Assembly: GCA_002269645.1 (NCBI GenBank)
Contig: NIVC01003794.1
Span: 1-64,000 of the forward strand
Reading direction: 5' to 3'
DNA: 64,000 nucleotides
Source: Macrostomum lignano
Taxonomy: Eukaryota
Shown: positions 2,666 to 64,000 of the stretch, piece by piece
Position numbering within the stretch: the stretch's first letter is position 1
Layout: every line of letters begins with the position of its first letter
Notes under the pieces: model-generated
Database searches by the model: none
The model's input: the letters and a program-made list of their open reading frames with translations, nothing else
Told to the model about the DNA's origin: nothing
Made by a program: the position numbers and the translations under genes

Positions 2666-3014
2666 TGTGCCTGTCACTCAGCAGCTCTTGTTCAGTAAGA
2701 CTGCTCACAGCTCCTTTACCTACAAAAGACTCATAATTGGATTCCGCCTGGCTCACAAGGGCCAGTTTGTGGCGGGTCAGGTTGACAGACACTGCTATGA
2801 ATTCCCCAGGGTACCTCAGGCGCCTCAGTGGGGATTTTAGTCGGCAGACTTTTGAAATTCGCCAAAAGCTTTGAAACCAGACTGATTTGATGACGGAAGC
2901 CGCTTGAGAGCGTTTAGGATAGAAAATTTCCGTAAAAGTCTAATTATTCGACAGGAAATGGTTTACTGGGAAGACGGGGCAGAAACAGAAGGAAAGAAAG
3001 GAGATGTTGAGGAA

Positions 3015-3960: not shown

Positions 3961-4709
3961 GCAGGGTTCTCCCAAATGTCAGACTGTCAGTGAAGCCACA
4001 GTTAATACTAAGCTGCCCAATTGATAGCAATATATGAAAAGGTGCCGTGTGGGCAGTCGGGGGAGCTGGGCTACACAGAGTGTTTCGCGAGTGTTTATCG
4101 CCCCCAAACTGCAGCTAACCGCAGCCTGACAGGCACGGCAAGGGCAGGCAAACTCGAAGCCCGTTTTCACTATCTTTCCGGCATAGCAACAGCGCAGGCA
4201 GCAGGTGACTGAGGGGGGCCACCCCTCTGTTTCTCTCATTGAAATTGGCATCGCAGCGAGGATTCCAAAACTGGAAAGTCCGACCGGGCCAATCTAGGCC
4301 AAAAGTACACTGAGATCAGGCGAATTCGGCCGGCGAATTCGTGTCCGAGTCCGAGATGGGCAAAGAATTTCTGCTGCGCTCAAAGTGTCGCTAAATGCTG
4401 CTCGGTCTGGGCTCGGGGTCTCGGATTTGCAGACTTTCTTCATTCCACAGGAAAATCGATGCCCAGAGGCAGAAGCGAGGGCGACATGAATTGATTTGTT
4501 GGACTGCCCGGACTGACAAAGCGAAATCTTTTCTTAAGCTGGTCGAAAAAAATACATTTTCGTGCATTAGAATTTGATGGGCCCAGCTGGAAATCTCTTT
4601 TCGAATTATCCCTGGCGAGAAGGCGAAGAAGGAGAAGCGATAATGGGAGAGTTGAAAGTTGGAACTGATGACAAACAGAAACTTAGGAGATGGAATAGGA
4701 TGACATCGC

Positions 4710-12900: not shown

Positions 12901-13462
12901 AAGTGGGAGAGGGGAGACAGAAGAGTTCAGAAAGTTCAGCCAGAAGAAGCAGAGGAAGGACAGGAGAACAGACAGAACCGGGAAAGTTTCTGTCGACTCG
13001 GGTTCCGGTTCTCAAAAAATCGTATTTTCGTGTCAAGCGCCGATATGTAGCGCATTCGCTAGCACCCAGTTCCTTAGGCTAAGCGGAATCGCCACTGAAG
13101 TTCAAAAAACGATGCGCGGAGAAGAAAGCAACGCAGTTTACCTCTGAACAGATGATAGAATTTCGGGCCAGGAGGCGGCAGGTTAAACAGGTGAAGAACA
13201 AGCGGAGCTGAAACAGGGCGATTCAGTCTGGGACTTTCATTCATCATCTGGCAGCGAAAGAGGCAGCGGAGGCGGCTGCTGCTGTCGGCAAAACAAAAAA
13301 ATGCCGCTGGGAATGAGGGATTCATGAAGGCTGCGGCACCCTGTTCCCATTTTACTGAACCTTCCCGCCTCCTATGGGGGATGCACAGAAATGCAGACGT
13401 GAAAAGGCGGCAAACAATTTGAAACTTTTACCTGCTGCAATTCATCGGGATAGTGTTGGGGG

Positions 13463-13634
<172 letters not shown>

Positions 13635-14212
13635 GGACTTCCCACGACAGCAAAAAGGACAGGATGCATTGGAGGTTCCCGGAGACCAAGGACTAAGCAT
13701 TGCTTAAGAATAACATTAAGTATGGAAGCCCACTGATGAGATGAGGCTGCGTGGAGGCTGGAATCATGTCTAACTAACGACCGACCTGATGCTGGGGGAA
13801 ACGAGCTCTTCTGAGTAGGTGGGGGAGATGGGTGTGTGGCAATTTCCGATCGATCCCAGGTAATGAGATGAAGTTGAGAGGCTGAATTGCTCAACGAGGA
13901 ACGCTGTAGCATAGGCGGGCAAAGGGGAGCAGCAGTGCTGATCCGATGGTCTGGGACTCGTCTCGGGAGTCGGGAGGGTATGGGGGGTAAATCCTGGAGC
14001 GCCATCGAAATGGCCAGTCGATTGTGACAAATCCGCTTTGTGTGTCATCGCATTACAGAAGTCCACACTGAGAGAGCTTCAATTCTCGATGATCATGGGT
14101 TTTCAATGCCTCTAGAACTAAGAGCGTTGACCAAATAGAAAGATGATATCCTCATAAAGCATATTATACGCGTAATAAATTTAGAAATGATTTAGATTCA
14201 ATTTATTTATAG

Positions 14213-17387: not shown

Positions 17388-18488
17388 CCCGCAACGATCG
17401 CAGCGCCGGAGCACCCGGCTGACCCCGTCGCGAATGCCGCGGTTGAAGACGATGGTGATGCAGGGCACCGCGGCGGAGTTCACGTACAGGATGTAGTAGC
17501 AGCTGATCTCCAGGTGCAGCAGGCCCATGTTGTCCAGCACCATGGGCAGCAGGCTGAAGAACTGCACCAGATTCCCCACGATCAGCGCCATCAGCGGGCG
17601 CAGCATTTGCTCTCCGCCACCGGCCTGCTGCGACAGTCGCTGCGACGGCCGCTGCTCCGGTTTCTCAGCGCTGTTCGAAGCCGCCGCGCCAGCCGCCGGA
17701 GCGGGCCCAGCCTGGCGCCGTTTCTGCCACCACCGGCCAACCAGGAGAGCCCCGGTGCCCAGGTAGCTGGCCAGGGACACCGAGTAGTTCAGCACCGCCA
17801 GGGCCGCCTTGACTAGCGCGTTCGCGCTCTGGTGCTCTGTTAGGAATCGGCAGACCGTCTCGCTGCCGTCCGGGTCCGCCGCCAGCCCCAGCATCAACCA
17901 GACCTGCAGGCCGGCCTCGCCCAGCACGGCGACCGCCACAACGCAGCAGGCGATGCCGCGGACGGCCGCCAGGCTCCAGCGCCGGCTGAGCGGCGCGGCC
18001 ACCGCCAGCAGCCGGTCGACGGCCAGCAGGCAGTAGGCGTTCGCCTCCAAGCCAATGGTGACGTCGCGCAGGCTGGTGAGGAACTTCGGCAGCGAGTAGC
18101 CCCTGGTCAGGTAGGGGTTCTCGTCCTCGGACGGCCAGCCCGGCCAGACGCGGTCGCCGCCGGAGGTGCGGTTGTGGTAGCCGATGCCCAGATAGAACAG
18201 CATGAGCAGCAGCACGCAGCCGGCCAGCAGCTCGTAGCAGCTGAGCAGCAGCGTCAGGAAGCGGAAGGTCCTCCTGGCGCCAGCGGGGAAGCCGCCGCCG
18301 ATGGTGACGGCGGAGACGATGAAGGAGTTGCCGAGGATGGCGAACAGGGCCAGGCAGGCGTACACGATGAAGAAGTGCAACCCGCTGGCCTGGCGCGGCT
18401 TGTACAGCTCGGCGAAGTCTCGGCACTGCGCACCCGCCAGCAGCAAGCCGGTCGAATTAGCGTCGCTCGACTCATTGGCGGTTGTCAT
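17364..18488 (-). CDS. Intronless orphan rhodopsin-like (class A) GPCR, 374 aa
   Basis: Seven hydrophobic segments, N-terminal NES/NST glycosylation sites, GN in TM1, AVDRL at end of TM3, NSAAVPCI in TM7, GC3-rich codons. Confidence 0.88.
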   Translation of the reverse strand: MTTANESSDANSTGLLLAGAQCRDFAELYKPRQASGLHFFIVYACLALFAILGNSFIVSAVTIGGGFPAGARRTFRFLTLLLSCYELLAGCVLLLMLFYLGIGYHNRTSGGDRVWPGWPSEDENPYLTRGYSLPKFLTSLRDVTIGLEANAYCLLAVDRLLAVAAPLSRRWSLAAVRGIACCVVAVAVLGEAGLQVWLMLGLAADPDGSETVCRFLTEHQSANALVKAALAVLNYSVSLASYLGTGALLVGRWWQKRRQAGPAPAAGAAASNSAEKPEQRPSQRLSQQAGGGEQMLRPLMALIVGNLVQFFSLLPMVLDNMGLLHLEISCYYILYVNSAAVPCITIVFNRGIRDGVSRVLRRCDRCGRERQAGR

Positions 18489-21881: not shown

Positions 21882-23510
21882 ACCATTCCCCTCCACCATT
21901 CCCCTCCACCATTCCCCTTCAACATTCCTCCTCCACCATTCCCCTCCACCATTCCCCTCCACCATTCCCCTCCACCATTCCCTCTCCACCATTCCCTCTC
22001 CACCATTCCCCTCCACCATTCCCTCTCCACCATTCCCCTCCACCATTCCCCTCCACCATTCCCCTCCACCATTCCCCTCCACCATTCCCCTCCACCATTC
22101 CCCTCCACCATTCCCCCTTCAACATTCCTCCTCCACCATTCCCCTCCACCATTCCCCTCCACCATTCCCCTCCACCATTCCCTCTCCACCATTCCCTCTC
22201 CACCATTCCCCTCCACCATTCCCTCTCCACCATTCCCCTCCACCATTCCCCTCCACCATTCCCCCTTCAACATTCCTCCTCCACCATTCCCCTCCACCAT
22301 TCCCCTCCACCATTCCCCTCCACCATTCCCTCTCCACCATTCCCTCTCCACCATTCCCCTCCACCATTCCCTCTCCACCATTCCCCTCCACCATTCCCCT
22401 CCACCATTCCCCTCCACCATTCCCCTCCACCATTCCCCTCCACCATTCCCCTCCACCATTCCCCCTTCAACATTCCTCCTCCACCATTCCCCTCCACCAT
22501 TCCCCTCCACCATTCCCCTCCACCATTCCCTCTCCACCATTCCCTCTCCACCATTCCCCTCCACCATTCCCTCTCCACCATTCCCCTCCACCATTCCCCT
22601 CCACCATTCCCCTCCACCATTCCCCTCCACCATTCCCCTCCACCATTCCCCTCCACCATTCCCCCTTCAACATTCCTCCTCCACCATTCCCCTCCACCAT
22701 TCCCCTCCACCATTCCCCTCCACCATTCCCTCTCCACCATTCCCTCTCCACCATTCCCCTCCACCATTCCCTCTCCACCATTCCCCTCCACCATTCCCCT
22801 CCACCATTCCCCTCCACCATTCCCCTCCACCATTCCCCTCCACCATTCCCCTCCACCATTCCCCTCCACCATTCCCCTCCACCATTCCCCTCCACCATTC
22901 CCCTCCACCATTCCCCTCCACCATTCCCCTCCACCATTCCCCTCCACCATTCCCCTCCACCATTCCCCTCCACCATTCCCCTCCACCATTCCCCTCCACC
23001 ATTCCCCCTTCAACATTCCTCCTCCACCATTCCCCTCCACCATTCCCCTCCACCATTCCCCTCCACCATTCCCTCTCCACCATTCCCTCTCCACCATTCC
23101 CCTCCACCATTCCCTCTCCACCATTCCCCTCCACCATTCCCCTCCACCATTCCCCTCCACCATTCCCCTCCACCATTCCCCTTCACCATTCCCCCTCCAC
23201 CATTCACCCCACCATTCCCCCTCCACCATTCCCCTCCACCATTCCCCTCCACCATTCCCCCTCCACCATTCCCTCAGCATTCCCCCTCCACCATTCCCCC
23301 CCACATTCCCCCTCCACCATTCCCCCTCCACCATTCCCTCAGCATTCCCCCTCCACCATTCCCCCCCCACATTCCCCCTCCACCATTCCCCTCCACCATT
23401 TACCCTCCATGTCTTACCCTCGACATCTCTCCCCTCCACTTCTCTCCCCTCCACTTCTCACCCCTCCACTTCTCACCCCTCCACTTCTCACCCTCCATAT
23501 CTCACCCTCT
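21882..23510. repeat. 13-bp CCATTCCCCTCCA array with higher-order blocks
   Basis: Marker cccccttcaacattcctcc recurs near 21915, 22113, 22261, 22461, 22661 and 23004. Confidence 0.95.
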
Positions 23511-23552
23511 TTCTCTCTCGAATCGAACCCACCCTCCCGGAACGCCCGCCAG

Positions 23553-23826
23553 CTGCTTCCGCCTGCTGGAGCAGTTCGACGCGGCCTTCTGCACGCGGCA
23601 CCGCTGCCAGCACGAGCGCGACCGCGTCACCCTGCTGCTCAACCGGTCGGTGCCGGAGAACACGTCGCTGCGAGTCAGCCGGCAGCGGCTGCGCAAATCC
23701 GACGACTATTTTGGCAAGATGCCGCTGCTGCCCGACCCGCACCTGGCCAGCATGGCGGCCCGGTTGACCCGGTCCTGCGTGAGCAGCAGCTCGCTGCTGG
23801 CCCAGCTGGTCGCCTGGGAGCCCTAG
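23553..23826 (+). CDS. Orphan 308-aa protein, exon 3
   Basis: Acceptor cccgccag, phase 2 matches; CFRLLEQFDAAFC...AWEP*. The three exons total 927 nt = 309 codons. Confidence 0.75.
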
Positions 23827-24114
23827 CGGATTCTGGCCAACGCGGATGTCAATATGATTATTAATTGAGAGTTGCTAGGCCTCACCTGATAGCGGCTCCA
23901 AGAGCCTGTGTGACCTTGGTACCAGTTGCTTTTCAGGCAGGCTTTTTTAATGCTAAAATTTTGCATTTACCCATTTAAACAAACAAATACCGGTATGTAC
24001 TCACTGATCCGATATGACTCTGATAGAAAACTTTTAAATATAATATTCGGTTATTATTGCAAAATTTTTAACACAGATAACGCAGCAAGGATTGAAATGA
24101 AACCCGTGAATTAT

Positions 24115-24870
24115 AGGAATCCAACACAAAACTGATTGGAATCCAACACAAAACTGATTGGAATCTAACACAAAACTGATTGGAATCCAACACAAAACTG
24201 ATTGGAATCCAACACAAAACTGATTGATTGGAATCCAACACAAAACTGATTGGAATCCAACACAAAACTGATTGGAATCCAACACAAAACTGATTGGAAT
24301 CCAACACAAAACTGATTGGAATCCAACACAAAACTGATTGGAATCCAACACAAAACTGATTGGAATCCAACACAAAACTGATTGGAATCCAACACAAAAC
24401 TGATTGGAATCCAACACAAAACTGATTGATTGGAATCCAACACAAAACTGATTGGAATCCAACACAAAACTGAGTGGAATCCAACACAAAACTGATTGGA
24501 ATCCAACACAAAACTGATTGGAATCCAACACAAAACTGATTGGAATCCAACACAAAACTGATTGGAATCCAATACAAAACTGATTGGAATCCAACACAAA
24601 ACTGATTGGAATCCAACACAAAACTGATTGGAATCCAACACAAAACTGATTGGAATCCAACACAAAACTGATTGGAATCCAACACAAAACTGATTGGAAT
24701 CCAACACAAAACTGATTGATTGGAATCCAACACAAAACTGATTGATTGGAATCCAACACAAAACTGATTGGAATCCAACACAAAACTGATTGGAATCCAA
24801 CACAAAACTGATTGGAATCCAACACAAAACTGATTGGAATCTAACACAAAACTGATTGGAATCCAACACA
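24115..24870. repeat. 22-bp GGAATCCAACACAAAACTGATT array
   Basis: About 34 homogeneous units. Confidence 0.96.
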
Positions 24871-25009
24871 ATACCTGATTTCTTCCGACAGAAAAGTTAT
24901 AAAACAAGTGTTCATTAGATCGACTGTCGCTACTTAAAGTAGGCCAGGAGCGGGCAGAGAGGGATAACGAAGAGGGATCGAAGGAAGAAGAGAGAGGAAG
25001 AGCGGTGAG

Positions 25010-25795
25010 GGGGGAGAGTGGAGTGACGGAGAGTGGAGAGAGGGAGAGTGGAGAGAGGGAGAGTGGAGAGAGGGAGAGTGGAGAGAGGGAGAGTGGAGAG
25101 AGGGAGAGTGGAGAGAGGGAGAGTGGAGAGAGGGAGAGTGGAGAGGGAGAGTGGAGAGAGGCAGAGTGGAGAGAGGGAGAGTGGAGAGAGGCAGAGTGGA
25201 GAGAGGCAGAGTGGAGAGAGGGAGAGTGGAGAGAGGCAGAGTGGAGAGAGGGAGAGTGGAGAGGGAGAGTGGAGAGAGGGAGAGTGGAGAGAGGGAGAGT
25301 GGAGAGAGGGAGAGTGGAGAGAGGGAGAGTGGAGAGAGGGAGAGTGGAGAGAGGGAGAGTGGAGAGAGGGAGAGTGGAGAGAGGGAGAGTGGAGAGAGGG
25401 AGAGTGGAGAGAGGGAGAGTGGAGAGAGGGAGAGTGGAGAGAGGGAGAGTGGAGAGAGGGAGAGTGGAGAGAGGGAGAGTGGAGAGAGGGAGAGTGGAGA
25501 GAGGGAGAGTGGAGAGGGGAGAGTAGAGAGAGGGAGAGTAGAGAGAGGGAGAGTGGAGAGAGGGAGAGTGGAGAGAGGGAGAGTGGAGAGAGGGAGAGTG
25601 GAGAGAGGGAGAGTGGAGAGAGGGAGAGTGGAGAGAGGGAGAGTAGAGAGAGGGAGAGTGGAGAGAGGGAGAGTAGAGAGAGGGAGGGTGGAGAGAGGGA
25701 GAGTGGAGAGAGGGAGAGTAGAGAGAGGGAGAGTGGAGAGAGGGAGAGTAGAGAGAGGGAGGGTGGAGAGAGGGAGAGTGGAGAGAGGGAGATAG
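25010..25795. repeat. 15-bp GGAGAGAGGGAGAGT array
   Basis: Direct inspection. Confidence 0.95.
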
Positions 25796-26236
25796 CTCGT
25801 TGATAAAAGCTTTAAAAATTCAGGATGTCCCGACTTAATAAAAGAACCACAGCCAAGTCTAAAGGCTAAAAAATAGGTAAATGTTAGTCCAAGTTTCCTC
25901 ACAGCACGCTATCACTTACACAATAATAAGCTGTGCATCAGTTCTAAATCGCCCAGTTTTTTGCCACCGCACAGAGATATTGGCTTGTTAACAGCTCGTA
26001 CTAGTCGACAGAGACTCCAGCTAGTGACTCAATGAGCCTGCAGTGCATATCATATTTTTTCTATCTTACTTGCTTTTTATAGCAAAGCTGTCAGAGCCCC
26101 GTGGCGAACGCGGACCCCCCTCCCCCTCAACCCACGCGAACTGATAAGAGCAGCGAACAGTCTTTAAGTGTCTTTCTGGCTCGGCTCTTTATTTTTGCAA
26201 ATTTTGCGCAGGCTGGTCGCGCGGCAGTCACTCAGC

Positions 26237-34865: not shown

Positions 34866-35468
34866 TCAACCGAAATTCGGCTTGGGCTTCACAATGGTGA
34901 CAGTTCTGGGCGTCTCCTGCACCGTCAGCCTGGGGTCCGCAGCCTTGGCGGCCGCAGTCAGCTGTTTCACATCCGTCTCTGTCAGCACGGCCTTGCTGAC
35001 CACCAAGTTCGGCATGGACGGGTTGGCCAGGAACTCGTCCAGTTTGCGGCGGAGCTCCGGGTTGATCGGCTGCTCATCCCGCTGCTGCTGCTGTTGAGAC
35101 TGCGAGCCGTTGCCGCCGCCGGCAAAGTCGCCGCCCATGCGCCTGTAGAGCCTTCGCTGGTCCTCCCGGTATTTCCGCAGCTCGTCATCGTTTCGTCGGA
35201 TGGCCTTCTCGACTCGGTCGCGAGAATTCGAGCTCAGGCCGACGCCGAGAATCTCGCGGCATCGCTGCAGCGATCTGGCCGCCTCGGCGTGCTGGCCCAT
35301 GGAGCAGAGGGCTTCGCCGCGCCACAACAGCGCCTTGGGGTTGCGCTCGTCCCGCTTCAGGGCCTCGTTGCATTCGCGCACAGCCGACGGGAACTTGCCG
35401 AGGTGGTACAGCGTGATGGCCTTGTTGACACTGATCACCGACAGCTCCCGGTTCATGCGGGCTTCCTC
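34866..35468 (-). CDS. FKBP6: FKBP6/Shutdown exon 3 (TPR2-3 + C-terminal extension)
   Basis: Acceptor cccgcag; SVNKAITLYHL and NPKALLWRGEA TPR motifs; TGA at 34866. Confidence 0.88.
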   Translation of the reverse strand, partial: EEARMNRELSVISVNKAITLYHLGKFPSAVRECNEALKRDERNPKALLWRGEALCSMGQHAEAARSLQRCREILGVGLSSNSRDRVEKAIRRNDDELRKYREDQRRLYRRMGGDFAGGGNGSQSQQQQQRDEQPINPELRRKLDEFLANPSMPNLVVSKAVLTETDVKQLTAAAKAADPRLTVQETPRTVTIVKPKPNFG

Positions 35469-35486
35469 CTGCGGGTTGGCCGGTTT

Positions 35487-36165
35487 GTTTGGGGTCATTC
35501 TCGGGTGAGTTCAGGGCGACTCCCAGAGTGTGTTTGGGGTCATTCTCAGGGTGAGTTCAGGGCGACTCCCAGAGTGTGTTTGGGGTCATTCTCAGGGCGA
35601 GTTCAGGGCGACTCCCAGAGTGTGTTTGGGGTCATTCTCAGGGCGACTCCCAGAGCGTGTTTGGGGTCATTCTCAGGGCGAGTTCAGGGCGACTCCTCCC
35701 AGAGTGTGTTTGGGGTCATTCTCAGGGCGACTCCCAGAGCGTGTTTGGGGTCATTCTCAGGGCGAGTTCAGGGCGACTCCCAGAGTGTGTTTGGGGTCAT
35801 TCTCAGGGCGAGTTCAGGGCGACTCCCAGAGTGTGTTTGGGGTCATTCTCAGGGCAAGTTCAGGGCGACTCCTCCCAGAGTGTGTTTGGGGTCATTCTCA
35901 GGGCGACTCCCAGAGCGTGTTTGGGGTCATTCTCAGGGTGAGTTCAGGGCGACTCCCAGAGTGTGTTTGGGGTCATTCTCAGGGTGAGTTTAAGGCGATT
36001 CCCAGAGCGTGTTTGGGGTCATTCTCAGGGTGAGTTCAGGGCGACTCCCAGAGTGTGTTTGGGGTCATTCTCAGGGCGAGTTTAAGGCGACTCACAGAGC
36101 GTGTTTGGGGTCATTCTCAGGGTGAGTTTAAGGCGACTCCCAGAGTGTGTTTGGGGTCATTCTCA
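35487..36165. repeat. 46-bp minisatellite with shorter deletion variants in FKBP6 intron 2
   Basis: GGGTCATTCTCAGGGCGAGTTCAGGGCGACTCCCAGAGTGTGTTTG. Confidence 0.95.
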
Positions 36166-36297
36166 GGGGGCGATTGTGTGAACTACATTAGGATGATTCT
36201 CGGGGCGATACTCGTACATATATGGGCAACTTTTTAAGACTGACAACGGCAGCTCTCGAAAATAAATCAGGGCTTCTTGTAGGGAGAAGATTACAGT

Positions 36298-36575
36298 GAT
36301 GTCTGCGCTTTTAGATGTCTATGGCTTAACAAACCTACATATGTCTATGGCCTAACACACCTACGTATGTCTATGGCCTAACACACCTACATTTGTCTGT
36401 GGCTTAACAGACCTACATATATCTGTGGCCTAACACATCTACATATGTCTGTGGCCTAACACATCTACATTTGTCTGTGGCCTAACACACCCACATGTCT
36501 ATGGCCTAACACACCCACATGTCTATGGCCTAACACGGCCCATTATATGTCTATGGTCAAGACATAGACTTTGAC
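36298..36575. repeat. Dispersed element with ~9 internal 26-bp units (ATGTCTATGGCCTAACACACCTACAT)
   Basis: Same element in reverse orientation with ~2 units at 61240-61333. Confidence 0.75.
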
Positions 36576-36633
36576 ACTGGCTTAGGCCCCAGAGCGACAG
36601 CTGGAGTAGCCGCAGGCGCGCCAGCCAACTAAC

Positions 36634-37284
36634 CTCTTCGCTGGTGACGTTCATGCTCGTGAGCACCTGCTCAGCGGCTCGGTATTTTTGATAGGCTTGC
36701 ACGTGCAGGCGGCGGCCGAACAGGTCCTTGGCGGTGTGTCGCAGGTTCTGCACAACGCCCAGCTGTACCCGGAATGGCACCTTCCGGCGCTCGTCCTCGT
36801 CCCGGGAATAGAACGCGTCCACCGAGTGGCTGTCGCAGAAGCTGACCAACTCGACGTCGGCCAGGATCGGCTCGCCGCCGGGGATGCGCGGAGCGGCGCC
36901 CTGCTCGCCAAGGAAGGCGTCGGGGTGGATGTGGAACACGGCCCGCTCGCCCTTGCACATGCTGGCCAGGGCCCAGTCGATGCCGGGGATCATGTCGGAG
37001 TTCAGCCGCTTCGTGTACGGCTTGGCGTCCAGGTGCTGCCTGGTGGAGTCGAAAGGCTCGACTAGCGACTCGGCGAACAGGGTATAGTGGAAGGTCACCA
37101 TGGCGTCCGGGGGCGGCGGGCTGCCCGAGCCGAACTTCTTCACCCGCTTGTGCAGCAGGCCGTGCCGCTCCGAGCCGGGGTCCGGGAACACGTCGGTCAT
37201 CGTGCGCCGCTTGCGCTCGAATCGGGAGACGCCGCTAGCGTCGTCCTCGGCATCGTCGTCATCTTCATCGTCGCTGATGCCCAC
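36634..37284 (-). CDS. FKBP6: FKBP6/Shutdown exon 2 (FKBP domain + TPR1)
   Basis: VTFHY..EPFDS..MCKGE..PRIP..DVELVSF FKBP signature, followed by SVDAFY...QKYRAA as in FKBP6; phase 0/0, 651 nt. Confidence 0.9.
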
Positions 37285-37369
37285 CTGCGGGAGCAGTGGG
37301 CCGGGCTCGGGTCAGGTCTCACCGATTGAGGCCAAGAGGCTTGCCTGGGAAATCTAGGACCCACTTGGG

Positions 37370-38005
37370 AATATGGGGTTTGGGAGCTGGGAATCAACAT
37401 GGGGATCTGGGAATCAACAATGGGATCTGGGATTAAGCAGGAATCAACATAGGGATTTAGAAATCAACAATGGGGATCTGGGAGTCAACATGGGGATCTG
37501 GGAGTCAACATGGGGATCTGGAAATCAACATGAGGGTCTGGGAATCAACATGGGGATCTAGAAATCAACACGAGGGTCTGGGAGTCAACATGGGGATCTG
37601 GGAGTCAACATGGGGATCTGGAAATCAACATGAGGGTCTGGGAATCAACATGGGGATCTAGAAATCAACATGAGGGTCTGGGAATCAACATGGGGATCTG
37701 GAAATCAACATGAGGGTCCGGGAATCAACATGGGGATCTAGAAATCAACATGGGAATCTGGAAATCAACATAGGGATCTGGAGATGAGCACAGGGGATCT
37801 GGGAATCAACATGGGGATCTGGGAGTCAGCATGGGGATCTGGGAATCAACATGGGGATCTGGGAGTCAACATGGGGATCTGGGAGTCAGCATGGGGATCT
37901 GGGAATCAGCATGGGGATCTGGGAATCAACATGGGGATCTGGGAGTCAGCATGGGGATCTGGGAGTCAGCATGGGGATCTGGGCCGAATCAACATGGGGA
38001 TCTGG
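37370..38005. repeat. 20-bp ATGGGGATCTGGGAATCAAC array in FKBP6 intron 1
   Basis: Direct inspection. Confidence 0.95.
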
Positions 38006-38052
38006 GAGCAACCAACTCAGAAACAGTGGATTATGTTCTGCAATGCACTCAC

Positions 38053-38340
38053 CTGCTCCATGCGCCTGAGATACTCCCTATCGCGGAACAAGCCCTGAAC
38101 CAGTTCAATTTCCGGATCCTCCTCGGTCTCGGGCACGCTGAACTCGACTCCATCGTTGCTGAGCACATCTCTGCGGTGGATTGGCTGGTTCAGCCGGGTA
38201 CTCGGCGCTTCAATGGCGCCTCCCTCGGACGGCATCTGGCTGACGATGCGATTGATGCGGTCCCGCTCCTCCTGGGTGAACTGCAGGTCCTGGCCGGACG
38301 CCGGGCCCTCACCATCACCGTTGCCATTGGCGGAAGGCAT
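38053..38340 (-). CDS. FKBP6: FKBP6/Shutdown exon 1 (acidic N-terminus)
   Basis: ATG 38340, 288 nt, donor cag|gtgagt. Full CDS 1542 nt = 513 aa. Confidence 0.82.
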
Positions 38341-41669: not shown

Positions 41670-41732
41670 CTACTTGAGCATCTTGTTTGCCCGATCGTTC
41701 GCCTCCTGGATGCGCTTGTCGTTGGACTCCGC
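41670..41732 (-). CDS. SNAP25: SNAP-25 last exon
   Basis: AESNDKRIQEANDRANKMLK*, acceptor cccgcag. Confidence 0.92.
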   Translation of the reverse strand, partial: AESNDKRIQEANDRANKMLK

Positions 41733-45552: not shown

Positions 45553-45697
45553 CTTGACTTTGATGCGGTCCAGTTGTCTATTCTGCGAATCGATCTCGCT
45601 GCCCATGTCTACTGCCATGTTGCGCAAGTTTCCAACCATGTTGCCGACCTCCTGGATGTTGTTGTCCATCTCGTCCTCCCGGGCGTCCTTGGTGATT
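45553..45697 (-). CDS. SNAP25: SNAP-25 exon (Qc SNARE motif)
   Basis: [48 protein letters not shown]; phase 2 in, phase 0 out. Confidence 0.95.
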
Positions 45698-46653: not shown

Positions 46654-46776
46654 CGAGTGACATATCCGCCTTGTATAGCCATGCCATTCTGGTCCACCAC
46701 CACCCGCGGCCCGTTGGTGTTGACGGCTCCGTCGTCGTCCTTTTTGAATTTTTTGTCAAAGTCGCCCTTGCCGGCT
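46654..46776 (-). CDS. SNAP25: SNAP-25 exon (linker)
   Basis: AGKGDFDKKFKKDDDGAVNTNGPRVVVDQNGMAIQGGYVT; phase 2/2. Confidence 0.92.
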
Positions 46777-52301: not shown

Positions 52302-52419
52302 TTATTCCAGGGCAAGATGCAGAGGCCGCAGCATTTGTTAAGATCGTCCAGATTCTTCTCGGCATCTTTCATGTCCTGGTTGATGTGGTCCATGCCCTCC
52401 TCAACGCGGTCCAGTTGCT
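52302..52419 (-). CDS. SNAP25: SNAP-25 exon (end of Qb motif + palmitoylation Cys cluster)
   Basis: [39 protein letters not shown]; phase 1/2. Confidence 0.95.
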
Positions 52420-54084: not shown

Positions 54085-54133
54085 CGCCCTGATCGTCTAA
54101 CATGACGAGGGTTGAAATGCCGGCCTCCTTTGC
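54085..54133 (-). CDS. SNAP25: SNAP-25 exon
   Basis: AKEAGISTLVMLDDQG; acceptor tgtgcag, donor gtaaga. Confidence 0.93.
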
Positions 54134-55604: not shown

Positions 55605-55646
55605 GTCTTCGCACAGTGCGACCATTCTCCTTGTGGACTCCAGAGA
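55605..55646 (-). CDS. SNAP25: SNAP-25 exon
   Basis: SLESTRRMVALCED; acceptor cgtttcag, donor gtaagc. Confidence 0.93.
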
Positions 55647-56704: not shown

Positions 56705-57135
56705 TGCCTGCCTGTCTGCCAACCTGTCTGTTTAACTGTCTGCCTGTCTGCCAACCTGTCTGTTTAACTGTCTGCCTGTCTGCCAACCTACCTGTCCAAC
56801 TGTCTGCCTAACTGTCTGCCAACCTGCCTGTTTAACTGTCTGCCTAACTGTCTGCCAACCTGCCTGTTTAACTGTCTGCCTAACTGTCTGCCAACCTGCC
56901 TCTCTAACTGTCTGCCTAACTGTCTGCCAACCTGCCTGTTTAACTGTCTGCCTAACTGTCTGCCAACCTGCCTGTTTAACTGTCTGCCTAACTGTCTGCC
57001 AACCTGCCTGTTTAACTGTCTGCCTGTCTTTCCAACCTGCCTGTCTGCCTACCTGCCTGTCTGTTTGTCTGTCTGTCTGCCTGTCTGTCTGTCTGCTAAC
57101 CTGCCTGCCTGTCTGTCTATCTGTCTGTCTGTTTA
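56705..57135. repeat. ~36-bp CTGTCTGCCAACCTGCCTGTTTAACTGTCTGCCTAA array
   Basis: Direct inspection. Confidence 0.9.
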
Positions 57136-57458
57136 CCTATCTGCTAGTCTTTTTTTCTGTCTGCAATGTCTTAGCCCGGTTATTCTTCCCACCAGTCCGT
57201 CCAACTGCACTTCACTGCCTGTCTCCTCAGCGCTGCTTTGTCAAGCCTAGTCCCTTCAAACTCGCGCACAGCCTTTCTCTCCAATAGAAGTTCATTCAAT
57301 CGTGGAAATGGAGAGAGAAGCTGGAAATGCGGAAGTTCATACAATAATTAAGCAATGAGAACTGAGCAGTGACCCCCTGGCAGAAAGGGGGACAAAGACG
57401 GCTGTCAAAGGAGGATTCCGATTGGCGGGGGGAGGTGCAAATGAGCAATGAAACGCAC

Positions 57459-57581
57459 TTCATTCTGAGCCCGGTCGATCTCCATCATGAGCTCCTCGGC
57501 CTCGGTGAGCGGACGCGGCTCGCCATTCTCGTCCAGATGGACGCCCCCGACATCAGCGGGCTGGTTTCGCCGATTAGACAT
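57459..57581 (-). CDS. SNAP25: SNAP-25 proximal first coding exon (41 aa; gives 220-aa isoform)
   Basis: MSNRRNQPADVGGVHLDENGEPRPLTEAEELMMEIDRAQNE, phase-0 donor gtgcgt; ends at the homologous E before SLESTRRM. Confidence 0.75.
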
Positions 57582-58704
57582 CCTGGGCGCCTCGACAATT
57601 ATTTTTATTCAGACGGTTACCGGGAAAACTGATGGGCTCACTAGAATAAACAGACACCCACGGAGCCGCTCCGACCTGCCGCCTCATTCATATCCTAGTA
57701 TTGTCACTTTTATTTCAAGCCCGGTCGATAGTAACCGGGTAGACAGAGAGAGACAGGGGAGGAGTGCCAGGAATAACTGGGAGCCGAGCCCGCGGGTTGG
57801 CTGGCAGGCTCGGGGAAAGAGTTTGCATAGCCCGCCAGGCTCAGCCTGAGGCTGGAGCGGGGGAGTTGAGAGGGCGAGTTTTCTAGAGGCAGACTGGGAT
57901 TGGGGAGAATGAGGACGGCTCAATGCGAGGCAGACCCCGAGCCATAGACACTGTGGCTGAGACGGCGGGCCACTGAGGTGGGATAACTGCGGTAGGCTGA
58001 ATGGCTCTGCCGACAATTCCTCTTCTTCTCTTTCAAAGTAAGCAAGTAGTTGCAGCAGCAGCAGCCGGCTCGCACCAATAGTCAAGGCAGAAATGGAAAG
58101 GATGGAATGGGGGAGGTTGGAGACTGGGACGGAAAAGTAGTCCAGCTGGAGCTGCAGAAGGGGAGGATAACTGCTCTAGATCTCAAGGTCGCATGCCTGA
58201 CAACTAGCAGCTTGCCACTTGCCCACGGCGGATCCACCCAACCTTTAGCCTCCTCAGCTAAAGCTCCATCAGCATCAGCCAGGGAAGAAAGAAAAGTCGA
58301 TTTTTACAACTAGAAGCCCCGTTGCTCCGTGCATGCACTATGCCGTGGGGTTTAATTTTCTAGCGTGTAACACCCAGCACAGTCTGAGACATTCAGCAGA
58401 GGAAATTGAGAAAGGGAGGCGGCAGACGGCTACCTTTGCCACTTTCCGCACACGCACGCGGATCAATAAAGCTCAGGACGAGGAGATTGTAAAAATTAAA
58501 GTTAAGTTAAACCGTTAAACGAATTCAGACCTGGAGTCTGCAGAGTCCCAACTTCCAAAGCCACGCACCGATAGCCACACAGCACATTAGGGTTCGGCCG
58601 AGCTTGATGTTTTTTGGTGATTTGGTACAGCAGTTATTGTTAGTTTCTTAACGAAAATGATGTACAAAAGAAAAAGCTAAAAAGCCAAAAAGACGATTCT
58701 TTGA

Positions 58705-59115
58705 TGGTTGACATGGCGATTGTTTTATGGCTGACATGGCGATTGTTTTATGGCTGACATGGCGATTGTTTTATGGCTGACATGGCGATTGTTTTATGGC
58801 TGACATGGCGATTGTTTTATGGCTGACATGGCGATTATTTTATGGTTGACATGGCGATTGTTTTATGGTTGACATGGCGATTGTTTTATGGCTGACATGG
58901 CGAATGTTTTATGGCTGACATGGCGATTGTTTCATGGCTGACATGGCGATTGTTTTATGGCTGACATGGCGATTGTTTTATGGCTGACATGGCGATTGTT
59001 TTATGGCTGACATTGCGATTGTTTTATGGCTGACATTGCGATTGTTTTATGGCTGACATGGCGATTGTTTTATGGCTGACATGGCGATTGTTTTATGGCT
59101 GACATGAGGCTTTTT
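58705..59115. repeat. 23-bp GACATGGCGATTGTTTTATGGCT array
   Basis: Direct inspection. Confidence 0.95.
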
Positions 59116-60177
59116 ATAGTTGACATGGTGAATCTTTTATTTTAATTCCTTTTCGTTAAATCTGCCTCAGTTTAAAAAGATTTTAATTAATAAAGTCAAA
59201 CCCGGTAGCTACATTAGCAGTTCAGTCTGTTCATATCTATGCTAGCTTTCATGAAATCGATGGGCTTTGTTTAAGGAAAATCATGTCTAATTGAACTTCT
59301 ACTGGATGCCGATACTCAAAAGATACTCAATGGTGACCGTACATACAGACCAGACTATAGCGGGTAAAACAACAATAATAAAGTTGTTAAGCGAAGCAAT
59401 CGTTAGGCCCGATGGACAAACTCAGAGCTGACCGGTACCCCGAGATTCTCATCTCTCTCATTTCCTTTCCTTTCCTCGACTGGACAAGGGAGGCAGGCAG
59501 AATCCGAGCAGGGCAAGCGGAAGCTTCGGCAGCGGCGGCGGGGGACGCAAGACAGCCGCCTGTCTGTACTTCCCGCCTGTCTGCTCCATCGTTGGATATT
59601 TGATTTGATGGGACAGCGCAGGCGGGCCAGAGGCATAAGCAGCAGCAGTGAGATAGCCAAGAGGAAGAGAATGAGTCTGATTTGCCAGTGTCAGCCAGCA
59701 GGGAAATTAACCCAATCAAGGCCACACGAAGCCTCTCAAATGAGTGTAATAAAAAACGCACACATCAGCACGCGCGAACTCAGCGAAGCCAGGCGGGCCA
59801 CAACTTCCCGCATCCCCTATCTATCCAATGGGATGATAACTGCTCGAATTTTTGCATGACATTCAGTTGCCAGCCAGAGGCGACTATTTATATAAAGAGA
59901 CCCTGTCCTAAATCCACGGGGAGCTCAGGCGCTTAAGGCTTTGCAGAAGCAGATGCTGCAGAGCAAATCGCCTGCGGAAGAAGTCAGAAAGATGGGCCTT
60001 GCTAAGTGTTTAGCCGACAAGCGGCGAGTCGCTTCAATTTCTGCTTTCGAAGAAGCACGCACTTTTGCCTACATGCATGGTTGCTACAGCCGTACGCAGC
60101 CTTCAGATGCGCCGCGCAATAGCTGCGGCTGAGCTGTCGGTTGCACATCTGCCCATTAGGGCACGTGTAATCAATTA

Positions 60178-61091
60178 TAGGATTTTTCGTTTGATTTCAT
60201 AAAATTGTCATTTGATTTCGTCCATAGAAGTTGGCAGCGCGGCCATAGAATCTATGGCAATAAAGTGCGCTGTTTTCCAATTGAATTCATAACTTTGCCA
60301 CTTCATTTCGACATACCCAGTAGAAAGGCAACAGAAAAGTCAATGCGCTTGTCCAGTACAGAAAGAACTGTTAAAAACAGAAAGCTGTGTATTTAAGTCA
60401 CATGAGGAAGTAGGCAGTTGCAACAGTGAAATCAGTTATGTCCGCCAAAGTTAATGCTCGTTCGCTGCAACAAGCTACAAATTTCACATTATCTGCTGCT
60501 CATTGATGCACAGGGGCAGAAACCGCATCACATGTCGTTCCCAGGCAAGGCACTTCGCGGCGGAAATTTCCTCTGGTGCAACGTAGCCGCAGCGGAAAAG
60601 CACCATGAGTCTCCACTGCGTTAGGTTGATGCCATCAGGCGGATTGCTAAGTTCCTGTTGAAGCTCAGGTGTTGCTAGCTGGCGTTTAAGCGAAGCATTG
60701 AGACAACTGTGTGCCTGCTCCGCGGCGTTAAGAAATGGAGAGTACGGTGGCAGAGCTCGCAGTTGAATACGATTGGCCGCGTTTATACGTTTCCAATGGA
60801 TGCAGCCATTTTTAGGCACACAAGGAAGGTGACTCTTGCCCAAGAAGAGGACACGTTCATATAGGCTTTTCATTTCTATGAGAGGTTTGGCCATAGATAT
60901 TCACCCACTGATATCCCAGCCCCCTCTGGCAGTGTTTGAGTCACTCCGCGCGTCAAGTCGAAATGAAGTGGCAAAGCTATGAATTCAATCGGAAAACAGC
61001 GCACTTTATTGCCATAGATTTTATGGCCGCGCTGCCAACTTCTATGGACGAAATCAAATGACAATTTTATGAAATCAAACGAAAAATCCTA
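60178..61091 (-). mobile_element. Internally deleted IS630-Tc1-mariner DNA transposon
   Basis: 135-bp TIRs (60178-60312 and 60957-61091, 3 mismatches seen) with TA at both ends; remnant ORF 60484-60894 contains LPPYSPFLNAAE (DDE_3 C-terminal motif). Confidence 0.9.
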
Positions 61092-61239
61092 TATTAATTA
61101 TTATAATTATTATGGTTGCTAGCAATCATTAATAACCCAAAACCACGATAGTTCAACGCGCAGATGTACTATTGCTAATTGTTTCCAAAACAATTTAACT
61201 ACCTTTTTGGGGAGTAAGAGGGTGGAGGAACAACTCAAA

Positions 61240-61333
61240 GTCAAAGCTCTGTCTAGGCCATAGACATGCTTGGGTGTGTTAGGCCATAGACATATTTGGG
61301 TGTGTTAGATAGACATCTAAAAGTGCAGACATC
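61240..61333. repeat. Short inverted copy of the 36298-36575 element
   Basis: Reverse complement gatgtctgcacttttagatgtctat...ctatggcctagacagagctttgac matches both ends of the 36.3-kb copy. Confidence 0.7.
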
Positions 61334-61902
61334 CCAAACTGTCTTTCTTTTCATGAAATAGCTTACACATTCTTCATTACTACTGAACTCAAAGTAGAGA
61401 AGCAGTAATATCTAAGTGGCCCATGCTAAAAGCTTTCCAAGACTGTACGACCTTTGCGTCCAGATCTTTCAGCAATGCTGAACTATTGAATGGCACTCAA
61501 GCAACAAAATCAGCTGATTAAGGATATAAAAAATCAGCTTAAAGGGCACAGCAATCGTCAATAACAACCAAGAAAAGAAAGGTGAAGTAAGTAAAGTAAA
61601 GAAAAAATGATAGAAAAATGTAAAATACTTCCTTTAGACGAAATAAAAATTTGATTAAAAAACCAAAATAATAACTGAAAGAACTGATCAGAGATCAACT
61701 GTAAATAGATCTAGCACTAACTTACAAGCCAATATGCACTTACCAGGCATTTCCAGTAGACTATGCAATCTATAAAACAAGTATATACACTGATCACTCT
61801 ACTGGTAAGTAGCATACCTAAAAAACAGTGCTTTGAATGCTACAAATTTTGTACTACCTAGAAGTGCAATAAATTAAAAATGAAACAGTCAATAAAGCAT
61901 AC

Positions 61903-61983
61903 CTCATCCGTTTTTTGATTCATTAGAAGTTGAATTTCTTCCAATTCTGTTTTGGGAACTGGTTGGTCATTGCTTTCTGCCAT
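61903..61983 (-). CDS. SNAP25: SNAP-25 distal first coding exon (27 aa; gives 206-aa isoform)
   Basis: MAESNDQPVPKTELEEIQLLMNQKTDE, acceptor gcacag 1 nt before ATG, phase-0 donor gag|gtatgc. PKTELEE motif is typical of invertebrate SNAP-25 N-termini. Not in the ORF track. Confidence 0.85.
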
Positions 61984-64000
61984 TCTGTGCACAGATGTGA
62001 ATGCATGAAGTCAATATTTTTCCATAGTTCTATAATATAACTCAAACAAAATGCATCAAAGACATGGCGAATTCCAAATAACTGCCTTAAGGCAAAAATA
62101 TGCTTCAGTTTATTCTTGAATGCTCTGTTTGCATAAAAAAACTTTATTTAACTCCTATTATGTCAAAAAATAATATAGTGAATCATATTTATGAAATTAT
62201 TCATTACCTTTTTTTAAGTTTCATATCAACTATACTCTGACAATTTAATATTTAATAATATAAGGCTAAAGCAATTAAGACTAATTGCATAGTTTCAATT
62301 TCTGAATGCCATATTATTGACTTTATTGTTTAATATTCTGTGTTATCAATAGCAAATCCAGATAAGGCCAACTTTATAAAAGCATTTTTATCCTTTTAAG
62401 AATGGGGATAGTTTTTCCTATTTTAACAAAGATAAGTTTCCTGACTATGGAAGTGTGTCTATAGGGGGCACAATCTATATCAAATGTGAAATCTATAAGA
62501 AATGATGCTTAATAGAAAAAGACCTATATTATTATACACATATTTGGCCAGTTGAAAAATACTACATATGAGATGGTTTAACTTATCAATATATAACTAG
62601 AACTAAACTATAAAAAAAGAATACAATTTTCAAAATACAATATGCTAAACTTGCCATGGTTGCTAGTTAGATTATTATATTCTATTTTATCATATTATAT
62701 AATGAAGTGACAAGGAGCAAAGTAGCCATTAATAATAAATAAAATTGCATTGAATATAGATAACAATATATACAAAGCTATTTAACTAGAAATTTAAACA
62801 CTGTAATAATCTTCTAGTGAGAAAGTCACTAATAATAAAAAATGGATATCAAGTCTCAAATATTAAAATTTTTATCCAAAATCTAAACATTTCAAACTTT
62901 TACTTTATTTATAATTTTTCTGACTATAATTTGCTTAGAATAGACATGCTTAGTAGATAATGAAAATACTTCCTCAGTTAGGTTAGTATATGCTACTTAA
63001 GATAACAAAGTGACTAAAACAAAGGAGGAGAAGACAAGAGAGAAGAAGAAAGAAAAGGATAAGAAAGAATAAAATAAGAGAGGAAAAAGTAGAATATAGG
63101 AAAGGAGAGAAAAAAGAAAGGATAAAAGAAAAAAGAGGATAGGAAAAGAAAGGACAAAAGAGAAGAAGACAGAAAAAAAGAGAAGGAAAAGGGAAAAATA
63201 AATGGGATAAGAGAAAAGAAAAGAGAAGAGACATAAACCTAAATTAGGCCAGATTGCTACTATAAAGTTTCAAAGGGCTAAAGGACCCCTGCCCTAGATA
63301 ATAAAATGACAAATGGCAAAATGATAAAGAACCATTGCCTCTATATCTTGCCATGTATCAATTTACAATTAGTTTCCTCTATTAAGAACCTTATAGAGCT
63401 GACTAGGCCTAATATTAATGTCAATGATCATTTGTAACAAATAAAATATATTTATTCTTTTATTAATTAAATAAAGCATGTTAATATTAGAATTGAATTA
63501 AGCCTTTGCTACCCAGTGATGCAACTAAGGGAGGGTCACGGAGGGCCTGTTAGGCCATAGGTTCTCTACTATTTTAAGGCCTACTTTGGATTTTTAAAAA
63601 AAGAATTTGAAAAACCCTTTTTTCTTTTTAACAATTTTAATTTTAGAAACAATAGTTTACTATTAAATTTGAAGCCATACTCAAACAAAAACTTGTTAGG
63701 CCTTAGGGCCTAATCATTAGGATAGAGATGAATATAAATAGAATAAATTGTATAAAATTAAGATTAGAAGCAAGCATTGATCTTGTTGACTAGGTGCTCT
63801 GGCCTTTGTCTCTACCTTGCTTTATTCTTCTTAGATCCTTTGAAACTTATATCTTCTTTTTTGTTTCTTCTATTTTCTTTTTCTTATGTATTTTTTCCCT
63901 ATCTTTTCTCTCTCCATTCTCTTGTCAATATTCCTTCATTTTTTCTGTCTTATCTTTGCTCTCTTATCTTTCTTTTTTTCTACTCTTTGATAGTATTATA

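What the first reader, a model, noticed from the sequence alone, without database searches (positions are those of the whole stretch)
57459..61984. SNAP-25 with two mutually exclusive first coding exons
Seen: two phase-0 exons each start with ATG and end at the Glu preceding SLESTRRM. Distal (61903-61983) is MAESNDQPVPKTELEEIQLLMNQKTDE and gives 206 aa. Proximal (57459-57581) is MSNRRNQPADVGGVHLDENGEPRPLTEAEELMMEIDRAQNE and gives 220 aa. They cannot simply be chained, since joining via the cccag before the proximal ATG reads GAT GTC TAA. Known: vertebrate SNAP-25a/b arise from a duplicated internal exon, not the first. Inference: exon duplication plus alternative promoters change the N-terminal layers of the Qb SNARE helix, possibly giving neuronal vs non-neuronal (SNAP-23-like) forms from one gene.
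Basis: partly seen in the sequence, partly recalled or inferred. Interest (0 to 1): 0.7.

Follow-up and report, generated by a model that had tools for sequence, protein, structure and literature searches.

The report
Flatworm SNAP-25 gene, two alternative starts
This is the SNAP-25 (synaptic fusion protein) gene of the flatworm Macrostomum lignano, and it really has two alternative first coding exons, but nematodes, blood flukes and snails have the same layout, so it is an unannotated isoform of a known kind, not a new kind of gene structure.

Summary
On the minus strand lies an 8-exon SNAP-25 gene of Macrostomum lignano. It has two ATG-initiated, phase-0 first coding exons: 1a at 61903-61983 and 1b at 57459-57581. 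Each has a GT donor and each ends just before SLESTRRM. They give proteins of 206 and 220 aa.

The 206-aa form is already in UniProt and NCBI. The 220-aa form is not in the collection searched.

Exon 1b is not a chance ORF:
- It is intact in all three near-identical genomic copies.
- An older M. lignano paralogue has its own 1b exon, while the surrounding intron no longer aligns.
- A monogenean, schistosomes and cestodes have 1b-type exons. Where the locus could be read, the order is 1a, 1b, exon 2.

Schistosoma japonicum is annotated with both isoforms, and a spliced Schistosoma mRNA contig starts just upstream of 1b. C. elegans ric-4a/b and Biomphalaria have the same layout, with the canonical exon distal and the longer exon proximal. 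In C. elegans the two first exons are used differentially between neuron types.

The alternative exons end five residues before SNARE layer -7, so the canonical layers do not change. A neuronal versus non-neuronal split has no support.

Novelty: new member of a known kind. Interest is low to moderate.

The parts
61903..61983 (-). Exon 1a, the distal first coding exon: 27 aa, MAESNDQPVPKTELEEIQLLMNQKTDE, donor gtatgc. It encodes the canonical SNAP-25 N-terminus.
   Evidence: Translation and splice sites. The 206-aa product is exactly UniRef100_A0A1I8GVE2 and is contained in PAA49761.1. A type-a HMM built from non-flatworm sequences scores it 31.8 bits.
57459..57581 (-). Exon 1b, the proximal alternative first coding exon: 41 aa, MSNRRNQPADVGGVHLDENGEPRPLTEAEELMMEIDRAQNE, donor gtgcgt. 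It is not annotated in the protein collection.
   Evidence: Translation. There is an in-frame TGA 10 codons upstream. The amino-acid sequence is identical in three genomic copies, with one synonymous change. 1b-type exons exist in the M. lignano paralogue, Cichlidogyrus, Schistosoma and Hymenolepis. The 220-aa product is not in the collection.
57583..57584 (-). The AG of the cccag|G site one base before the 1b ATG. It could be a cis or spliced-leader acceptor, or it could be incidental.
   Evidence: Sequence. Cis-splicing of 1a to this site gives GAT GTC TAA. The AG is not conserved in the paralogue or in S. japonicum. Whether it is used is not known.
57599..57609 (-). An A/T-rich, TATA-like stretch (AATAAAAATAA) 18-28 nt upstream of the 1b ATG. 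It is only a candidate core-promoter element.
   Evidence: Read directly from the sequence. This is inference only and was not tested.
55605..55646 (-). Common exon 2 (42 nt, SLESTRRMVALCED). It contains SNARE layer -7 (the T of ESTRRM) and layer -6 (M).
   Evidence: Layer positions were counted back from the zero-layer Gln using the standard 3/4 spacing. That step rests on established knowledge, not on a tool result.
54085..54133 (-). Common exon 3 (49 nt, AKEAGISTLVMLDDQG).
52302..52419 (-). Common exon 4 (118 nt, EQLDRVEEG...[10 protein letters not shown]). It holds the zero-layer region and the palmitoylation Cys cluster. From my own knowledge, it corresponds to the alternatively spliced vertebrate exon 5.
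   Evidence: The window holds only one copy.
46654..46776 (-). Common exon 5 (123 nt), the linker region.
   Evidence: PF00835 matches residues 108-158 of the 220-aa form.
45553..45697 (-). Common exon 6 (145 nt), the main part of the second (Qc) SNARE motif.
41670..41732 (-). Common exon 7, the last coding exon (AESNDKRIQEANDRANKMLK followed by TAG).
   Evidence: The window has no second last-exon copy.

Best explanation
The window carries one of three near-identical copies of a Macrostomum lignano SNAP-25 gene. The gene has two alternative first coding exons that are never joined to each other.

Transcripts that start at the distal exon 1a encode the canonical 206-aa protein. Transcripts that start inside intron 1, just upstream of exon 1b, encode a 220-aa protein. 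Both first exons splice in phase 0 to the same exon 2.

The last 16 residues of each first exon are the same structural segment: the N-terminal extension of the first SNARE helix, upstream of layer -7. Exon 1b adds a tail of about 25 residues that contains a conserved D-x-N/D-G-x-x-R-P turn motif.

So the 16 core layers, the Cys cluster, the linker and the second SNARE motif are identical in both forms. Only the N-terminal tip differs. The likely consequences are different partner binding or different nucleation of the t-SNARE, together with different cell-type expression set by the two promoters.

Shown here: the exon anatomy, conservation of 1b, and the same layout in other flatworms, C. elegans and a snail. 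Inferred: use of 1b in M. lignano itself, an internal promoter for it, and any functional difference between the two proteins.
For: Gene model and splice sites.

Organism and the annotated 206-aa form.

Exon 1b within M. lignano:
- It is intact in loci L002, L003 and L004.
- The paralogue Mlig003741 carries a 1b' exon (L012:12424-12516, MAGAEEPADATAPPLTEADEIMLLVDRAQTE) with an ATG, a GT donor and an upstream stop.
- Nucleotide similarity to the window copy is confined to the last 59 nt of the exon; the flanking intron does not align.

Other flatworms:
- Cichlidogyrus: the annotated protein starts with a 1b-type exon, and an unannotated, intact 1a-type exon lies 3 kb upstream.
- S. japonicum: isoform 4 (1a type, 202 aa) and isoform 3 (1b type, 218 aa) come from one gene, with exon order 1a, 1b, exon 2.
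- Schistosoma RNA contigs join 1b to exon 2. Their 5' UTR is colinear with the genomic DNA upstream of 1b.

Other phyla:
- C. elegans: the a exon is distal, the b exon is proximal, and the boundary is the same. The two are used differentially between neuron types.
- Biomphalaria: same order and same boundary.

Structure:
- Residues 26-111 of the 220-aa form align to human SNAP-25 residues 9-94.
- The AlphaFold2 model has residues 1-13 at low confidence, a weak hairpin at 14-23, and a helix from residue 27 onward.
Against: - There is no M. lignano RNA evidence. The 220-aa protein is absent from a collection of 15 billion proteins, and no M. lignano protein with a 1b-exon 2 junction was found.
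- The three genomic copies are about 97% identical, so exon conservation among them is not significant. One substitution was seen in the 123 nt, against about 3.6 expected.
- The paralogue's 1b' exon lacks the D-x-N-G motif.
- The promoter is inferred from other species and from a TATA-like stretch only.
- Both Schistosoma RNA contigs that carry 1b skip exon 3 and are frameshifted. Part of the 1b transcription in that genus may therefore be non-productive.
Confidence: 0.82

Rival explanations
1. Exon 1b is transcribed from the distal promoter, not from a promoter of its own. It would then reach mature mRNA either by spliced-leader trans-splicing at the cccag|G site just before its ATG, or as an internal exon in non-productive transcripts.
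For: [quoted passage not shown] An AG lies one base before the 1b ATG.
Against: The site matches the published trans-splice motif [T/C]TNCAG only in its CAG. The AG is not conserved in the paralogue or in S. japonicum. An SL ATG joined at this site would open a 3-codon out-of-frame uORF that overlaps the real ATG. An acceptor with a donor upstream in cis is normally cis-spliced (Conrad rule, cited), and that would give a stop codon. The Schistosoma mRNA contigs carry about 200 nt of genomic 5' UTR and lack the TTGCATG 3' end of the SL.
Confidence: 0.12
2. In M. lignano, exon 1b is a decaying relic or a chance ORF in intron 1, and only the annotated 206-aa isoform is made.
For: Only the 206-aa form is in the databases. 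ATG-to-GT, phase-0 stretches are common in this intron: 20 candidates. The three copies are too similar to each other to show constraint.
Against: The ATG, reading frame, GT donor and phase are intact in five M. lignano loci, including an old paralogue whose introns no longer align. The Cichlidogyrus 1b peptide finds this exact exon by tblastn (E=0.002). Trematodes, cestodes and a monogenean share the motif R-P-(L/M)-T-E-x-E...I-D.
Confidence: 0.05
3. One reading: 1a gives a neuronal SNAP-25 and 1b gives a ubiquitous, SNAP-23-like form.
For: This is not a tool result. From my own knowledge, invertebrates lack a separate SNAP-23 gene. Two promoters would allow different tissue expression.
Against: In C. 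elegans both first exons are used in neurons and differ by neuron type. The two proteins are identical from layer -7 to the C-terminus, whereas, from my own knowledge, vertebrate SNAP-23 differs from SNAP-25 along its whole length. M. lignano has a second paralogue with its own a/b pair.
Confidence: 0.15

Closest known systems
C. elegans ric-4 (SNAP-25) isoforms ric-4a and ric-4b (Hwang and Lee 2003, J Mol Biol 333:237; Nat Commun 2025, PMC12084653)
   Same: There are two mutually exclusive first coding exons. The short canonical one (MSGDDDIPEGLEAINLKMNATTDD) is distal. The longer one (51 aa...VDINGLVLPADMSDELKGLNVGIDEKTIE) is proximal. Both end in phase 0 directly before SLESTRRM. Use differs between neuron types.
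   Different: Sequence similarity between the nematode and flatworm b exons is not significant (hhalign P=0.075; HMM). In the worm the b exon lies only about 100 nt from exon 2; here the distance is 1.8 kb.
Schistosoma japonicum synaptosomal-associated protein isoform 3 (KAH8853157.1, CAX73240.1) and isoform 4 (KAH8853158.1)
   Same: The exon order is the same: 1a, 1b, exon 2. The 1b exon is clearly homologous (DDGIIRPMTEVELLRRKIDETTSD against DENGEPRPLTEAEELMMEIDRAQNE). Both isoforms are annotated from one gene.
   Different: Neodermatan 1b exons carry a conserved C-G-x-D-E-V motif that M. lignano lacks. The introns are much shorter.
Mollusc SNAP-25 RefSeq isoforms, for example Biomphalaria glabrata X5 (type a) and X1 (type b), and also Physella and Haliotis
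   Same: The a exon is distal, the b exon is proximal, and the boundary is the same. The flatworm-b and mollusc-b profiles align end to end in the correct register (P=0.004).
   Different: The Biomphalaria locus also has a duplicated exon 3 and a duplicated last exon. This window has neither. The mollusc b exons have no D-x-N-G motif.
Vertebrate SNAP-25a and SNAP-25b (mutually exclusive exons 5a and 5b)
   Same: A duplicated exon is used in a mutually exclusive way within a SNAP-25 gene. The exon sizes 42, 49 and 118 nt found here match, from my own knowledge, vertebrate exons 3, 4 and 5.
   Different: The vertebrate pair is internal, is chosen by splicing, and changes core-helix residues and the spacing of the Cys cluster. 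The pair here is the first coding exon, is probably chosen by promoter, and lies outside the 16 layers.

Membership tests
SNAP-25 family (Qbc t-SNARE) | SNAP-25 family linker domain (Pfam PF00835) above the curated cut-off | tested here: met
   45.9 bits against a cut-off of 25, residues 108-158.
SNAP-25 family (Qbc t-SNARE) | Two SNARE motifs, each with a zero-layer Gln, flanking a linker with a Cys cluster | tested here: met
   Residues 26-111 align to solved SNAP-25 SN1 chains at E=2.5e-32, including DDQGEQ and CCGLC. The second motif aligns to human residues 136-185. The AlphaFold2 model has helices at 27-101 and 157-219.
SNAP-25 genes with a/b alternative first coding exons (ric-4a/b type) | Two ATG-initiated exons, each splicing in phase 0 to the exon that begins with SLESTRRM | tested here: met
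SNAP-25 genes with a/b alternative first coding exons (ric-4a/b type) | The canonical (type a) exon is distal and the longer divergent (type b) exon is proximal | tested here: met
   The window has 1a at 61983 and 1b at 57581 on the minus strand. The order is the same in L001, L005, L012, L014 and L015.
SNAP-25 genes with a/b alternative first coding exons (ric-4a/b type) | Both first exons are found in mature mRNA of the same organism | not testable with these tools
   No M. lignano RNA data can be reached. Only the 1a form is on record. RNA support exists for Schistosoma and C. elegans.
SNAP-25 genes with a/b alternative first coding exons (ric-4a/b type) | The b exons of different phyla are orthologous, descending from one ancestral exon | tested here: inconclusive
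   Within flatworms this is clear. Flatworm against mollusc gives P=0.004, flatworm against nematode P=0.075, and nematode against mollusc gives no alignment. The leave-out HMM tests are weak.
Vertebrate-type SNAP-25a/b (exon 5 pair) | A duplicated 118-nt exon covering the end of SN1 and the Cys cluster | tested here: not met
   The window holds a single exon 4 copy.

The most novel reading that the evidence does not exclude
The pair of alternative first coding exons (canonical a distal, longer b proximal, both ending before SLESTRRM) may be a single ancestral feature of protostome SNAP-25 genes, and perhaps of bilaterian ones. It would then have been kept for more than 500 million years in flatworms, nematodes and molluscs, with a b-specific N-terminal tail (D-x-N-G-x-x-x-P in flatworms, nematodes and an acoel) serving a still unknown binding function. 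Four full-text searches of the held library that paired SNAP-25 with flatworm, ric-4, alternative-first-exon or Schistosoma terms found no paper describing this cross-phylum conservation.
Probability: 0.45. Interest if true: 0.45.

Novelty: new member of a known kind. Interest (0 to 1): 0.3.

Why it matters
For M. lignano, it adds a missing isoform to a core synaptic gene in a regeneration model, and probably a missing internal promoter as well. That promoter is a candidate neuron-subtype driver for transgenesis.

More broadly, four phylogenetically distant flatworm groups, C. elegans and a snail share the same two-start layout. This suggests that the N-terminal tip of SNAP-25, which lies outside the well-studied 16 layers, carries an old, isoform-specific function that has not been examined. 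It does not change how SNARE core assembly is understood.

Tried and rejected
1. Constraint on 1b among the three M. lignano copies. The copies are about 97% identical and the test has no power: one substitution against 3.6 expected.
2. A search for an M. lignano protein spanning the 1b-exon 2 junction. Neither the exact look-up nor the homology searches found one.
3. A type-a exon upstream of the Lamellibrachia gene. None was found within 10 kb, so that annelid N-terminus may simply be divergent.
4. Cross-phylum orthology of the b exons, tested with leave-out HMMs and hhalign. The result was weak or inconclusive.
5. The antisense 120-aa ORF at 57487-57849. It has no Pfam match and I treat it as chance.
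6. The bacterial-type promoter scan. It is not applicable to a eukaryote and I ignored it.
7. A literature search for residue-level layer assignments. It gave nothing usable, so the layer positions rest on standard knowledge.
8. Extra alternative exon 3 or last-exon copies in the window. None was found.
Full report
**What is at the coordinates.** The gene lies on the minus strand. A tblastn search with human and fly SNAP-25, followed by inspection of the splice sites, gives a complete model:
- exon 1a at 61903-61983
- exon 1b at 57459-57581
- exon 2 at 55605-55646 (SLESTRRMVALCED)
- exon 3 at 54085-54133
- exon 4 at 52302-52419
- exon 5 at 46654-46776
- exon 6 at 45553-45697
- exon 7 at 41670-41732, ending in TAG

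All introns are GT-AG. Pfam PF00835 (SNAP-25) scores above its cut-off. Residues 26-111 of the long form align to human SNAP-25 residues 9-94 in solved SNARE complexes.

**Organism and annotation status.** The 206-aa protein is exactly UniRef100_A0A1I8GVE2, and it is contained in PAA49761.1, PAA86586.1 and PAA54787.1 of Macrostomum lignano. The 220-aa protein is not in the collection. The window is identical to NIVC01003794.1 (locus L002). Two further copies, L003 and L004, are about 97.7% identical over this region.

**Is exon 1b more than chance?** The bare pattern is not. Intron 1 holds 20 ATG-to-GT, phase-0 stretches of at least 25 codons. The three near-identical copies cannot show constraint either: one synonymous change was seen in the 123 nt, against about 3.6 expected.

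The decisive evidence is comparative.

- Within M. lignano, an older paralogue (Mlig003741, P0348, loci L012 and L013) has its own 1b' exon between its 1a and its exon 2. It reads MAGAEEPADATAPPLTEADEIMLLVDRAQTE. It has an ATG, a gtaaac donor and an in-frame TGA five codons upstream. Nucleotide similarity to the window is confined to the last 59 nt of the exon (77% identity), and the flanking intron does not align.
- In the monogenean Cichlidogyrus casuarinus, the annotated SNAP-25 starts with a 1b-type exon (…DADGTVRPMTEKEIIMREVDFVAVE). An intact, unannotated 1a-type exon (MADPRATEEPPVPMTEFEMIKFKMNQTTDE followed by gtgagt) lies 3 kb upstream.
- Schistosoma japonicum is annotated with both forms from one gene: isoform 4 (202 aa, 1a type) and isoform 3 (218 aa, 1b type). 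The exon order is 1a, 1b, exon 2.
- Cestodes (Hymenolepis) and other trematodes have 1b-type exons.
- In M. lignano, Cichlidogyrus and S. japonicum, an in-frame stop precedes the 1b ATG. So 1b is a translation-start exon, not a cassette exon.

**Transcript evidence, in another flatworm only.** Two Logan RNA contigs from Schistosoma runs (L010 and L011) join 1b directly to exon 2. Their 5' UTR is colinear with about 200 nt of genomic DNA immediately upstream of 1b. Neither 1a nor the TTGCATG 3' end of the spliced leader is present. This fits a transcription start inside intron 1. Both contigs skip the 49-nt exon 3 and are therefore frameshifted, which I cannot explain. From my own knowledge, the S. 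japonicum accession CAX73240.1 is cDNA-derived.

**Beyond flatworms.**
- C. elegans RIC-4 (234 aa, P0264) begins with a 51-aa exon that ends …IDEKTIE before SLESTRRM. In the genome, the canonical a exon is distal (L014:10001-10072) and this b exon is proximal (17622-17774), about 100 nt from exon 2.
- Published work shows that ric-4a (distal) and ric-4b (proximal) are used differentially between neuron types. About 90% of ric-4 expression in NSM is ric-4a, and about 80% in PVM is ric-4b (PMC12084653, citing Hwang and Lee 2003).
- Diploscapter is annotated with isoforms A and B of the same two kinds.
- Biomphalaria glabrata has the a exon at L015:10001, the b exon at 26481 and exon 2 at 46355. 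Physella and Haliotis RefSeq isoforms show the same two N-terminus types.

**Are the b exons of different phyla one ancestral exon?** This is not proven.
- Flatworm b exons are clearly homologous to each other.
- Flatworm against mollusc profiles align in register at P=0.004.
- Flatworm against nematode gives P=0.075.
- Nematode against mollusc gives no alignment.
- The leave-out HMM tests discriminate only weakly.
- A D-x-N-G-x-x-x-P motif is seen in M. lignano, nematodes, an acoel protein (P0040) and an unidentified organism (P0013).
- The shared boundary is simply the conserved intron position, so it carries little weight on its own.

**Are 1a and 1b duplicates?** They encode the same segment, end at the same phase-0 boundary, and share P-x-P-x-T-E-x-E-E (32% identity, E about 0.03). 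The flatworm-b HMM hits flatworm a exons at 12-14 bits. Duplication is the simplest origin, but the sequence evidence for it is weak.

**What changes in the protein.**
- The zero-layer Gln is Q70 in the long form, within DDQGEQ.
- Counting back with the standard 3/4 spacing puts layer -7 at T46 and layer -6 at M49. Both lie in common exon 2. This step rests on established knowledge of the neuronal SNARE complex, and an error of one position would still leave layer -7 inside exon 2.
- Exon 1b ends at E41 and exon 1a at E27.
- The 16 canonical layers are therefore identical in the two isoforms. The alternative exons supply the helix extension N-terminal to layer -7, equivalent to human residues 9-24, plus a tail.
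- The AlphaFold2 model (mean pLDDT 69) has residues 1-13 at low confidence, a weak hairpin at 14-23 around DENG, a P-L-T cap, and a continuous helix over residues 27-101.
- The hydrophobic positions at 8, 11, 15 and 18 residues before the layer -7 Thr are A, I, L, A in 1b and K, M, I, L in 1a. This was read directly from the sequence.

**Mechanism, best estimate.** Two promoters each drive one first exon, and both exons splice to exon 2.
- It matches the published SL trans-splice motif only in its CAG, and it is not conserved in the paralogue or in S. japonicum.
- A second AG nine bases upstream of the ATG would chain the exons in frame, but it lacks a pyrimidine tract.
- A TATA-like AATAAAAATAA lies at 57599-57609. 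This is inference only.

**Verdict.** The structural interpretation is supported by strong comparative evidence, but it has not been shown at the RNA level in M. lignano. The claims about changed layers and about a neuronal versus non-neuronal split are not supported. This is an unannotated isoform of a known, conserved kind. The residual point of interest is the possible common ancestry of the a/b pair across protostomes.

Noticed in passing
L012:10001-17496 and L013:10001-16086 (M. lignano NIVC01001883.1 and NIVC01003103.1): There is a second, older M. lignano SNAP-25 paralogue (Mlig003741, 208 aa) with much shorter introns. It has its own pair of alternative first exons, and its 1b' exon lacks the D-x-N-G motif.
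   Followed up: yes
L010 and L011 (Logan ERR5727254 and ERR5727054, Schistosoma RNA contigs): Both 1b-initiated mRNA contigs skip the 49-nt exon 3. This causes a frameshift and a 60-aa ORF, followed by a separate 139-aa ORF that starts in exon 4. It could be a regulated non-productive isoform or an assembly path artefact.
   Followed up: partly
L015:47144-47191 and 74558-74605; L015:91982-92047 and 94703-94768; L007:16189-16236 and 22722-22769: Biomphalaria has two exon 3-type exons and two alternative last exons. Lamellibrachia has two exon 3-type exons. Insect fragments with variant exon 3 peptides also turned up in the searches. The M. lignano window has only single copies.
   Followed up: partly
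window 58694-59106 and 56705-57163: Intron 1 holds tandem arrays: a 23-bp unit repeated 18 times, and a 12/36-bp unit in about 37 or 10 copies. These are the stretches where the three genomic copies differ most, by copy number or indels.
   Followed up: partly
window 60484-60894 (minus strand): A 136-aa ORF in intron 1 contains ...LPPYSPFLNAAEQ.... From my own knowledge this resembles the DDE transposase motif of Tc1/mariner-type elements, so it is probably a transposon remnant.
   Followed up: no
window about 34866-38340 (minus strand): The next gene downstream of SNAP-25 is annotated in L002 and L004 as a 513-aa FKBP_C and TPR protein.
   Followed up: no
window 1-4000, 12001-14000, 22001-26000: These blocks have extreme GC and AT skew (up to +/-0.77) and many overlapping ORFs on both strands. 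That is typical of strand-asymmetric simple or low-complexity repeats.
   Followed up: no
L008:2117-2395 (Logan SRR22388065, organism unknown): A 1b-type N-terminus (…LDANGNPILTEAEQLQLEIKNATLE) is contiguous with exons 2 and 3 in a single ORF, so this organism has no introns at these positions. Among sequences not identified as flatworm, it and its close relative P0014 score highest on the flatworm-1b HMM (16.8 and 17.7 bits).
   Followed up: partly
window 57487-57849 (plus strand): A 120-aa ATG ORF lies antisense to exon 1b. It has no Pfam match and is probably a chance ORF in GC-rich sequence.
   Followed up: yes
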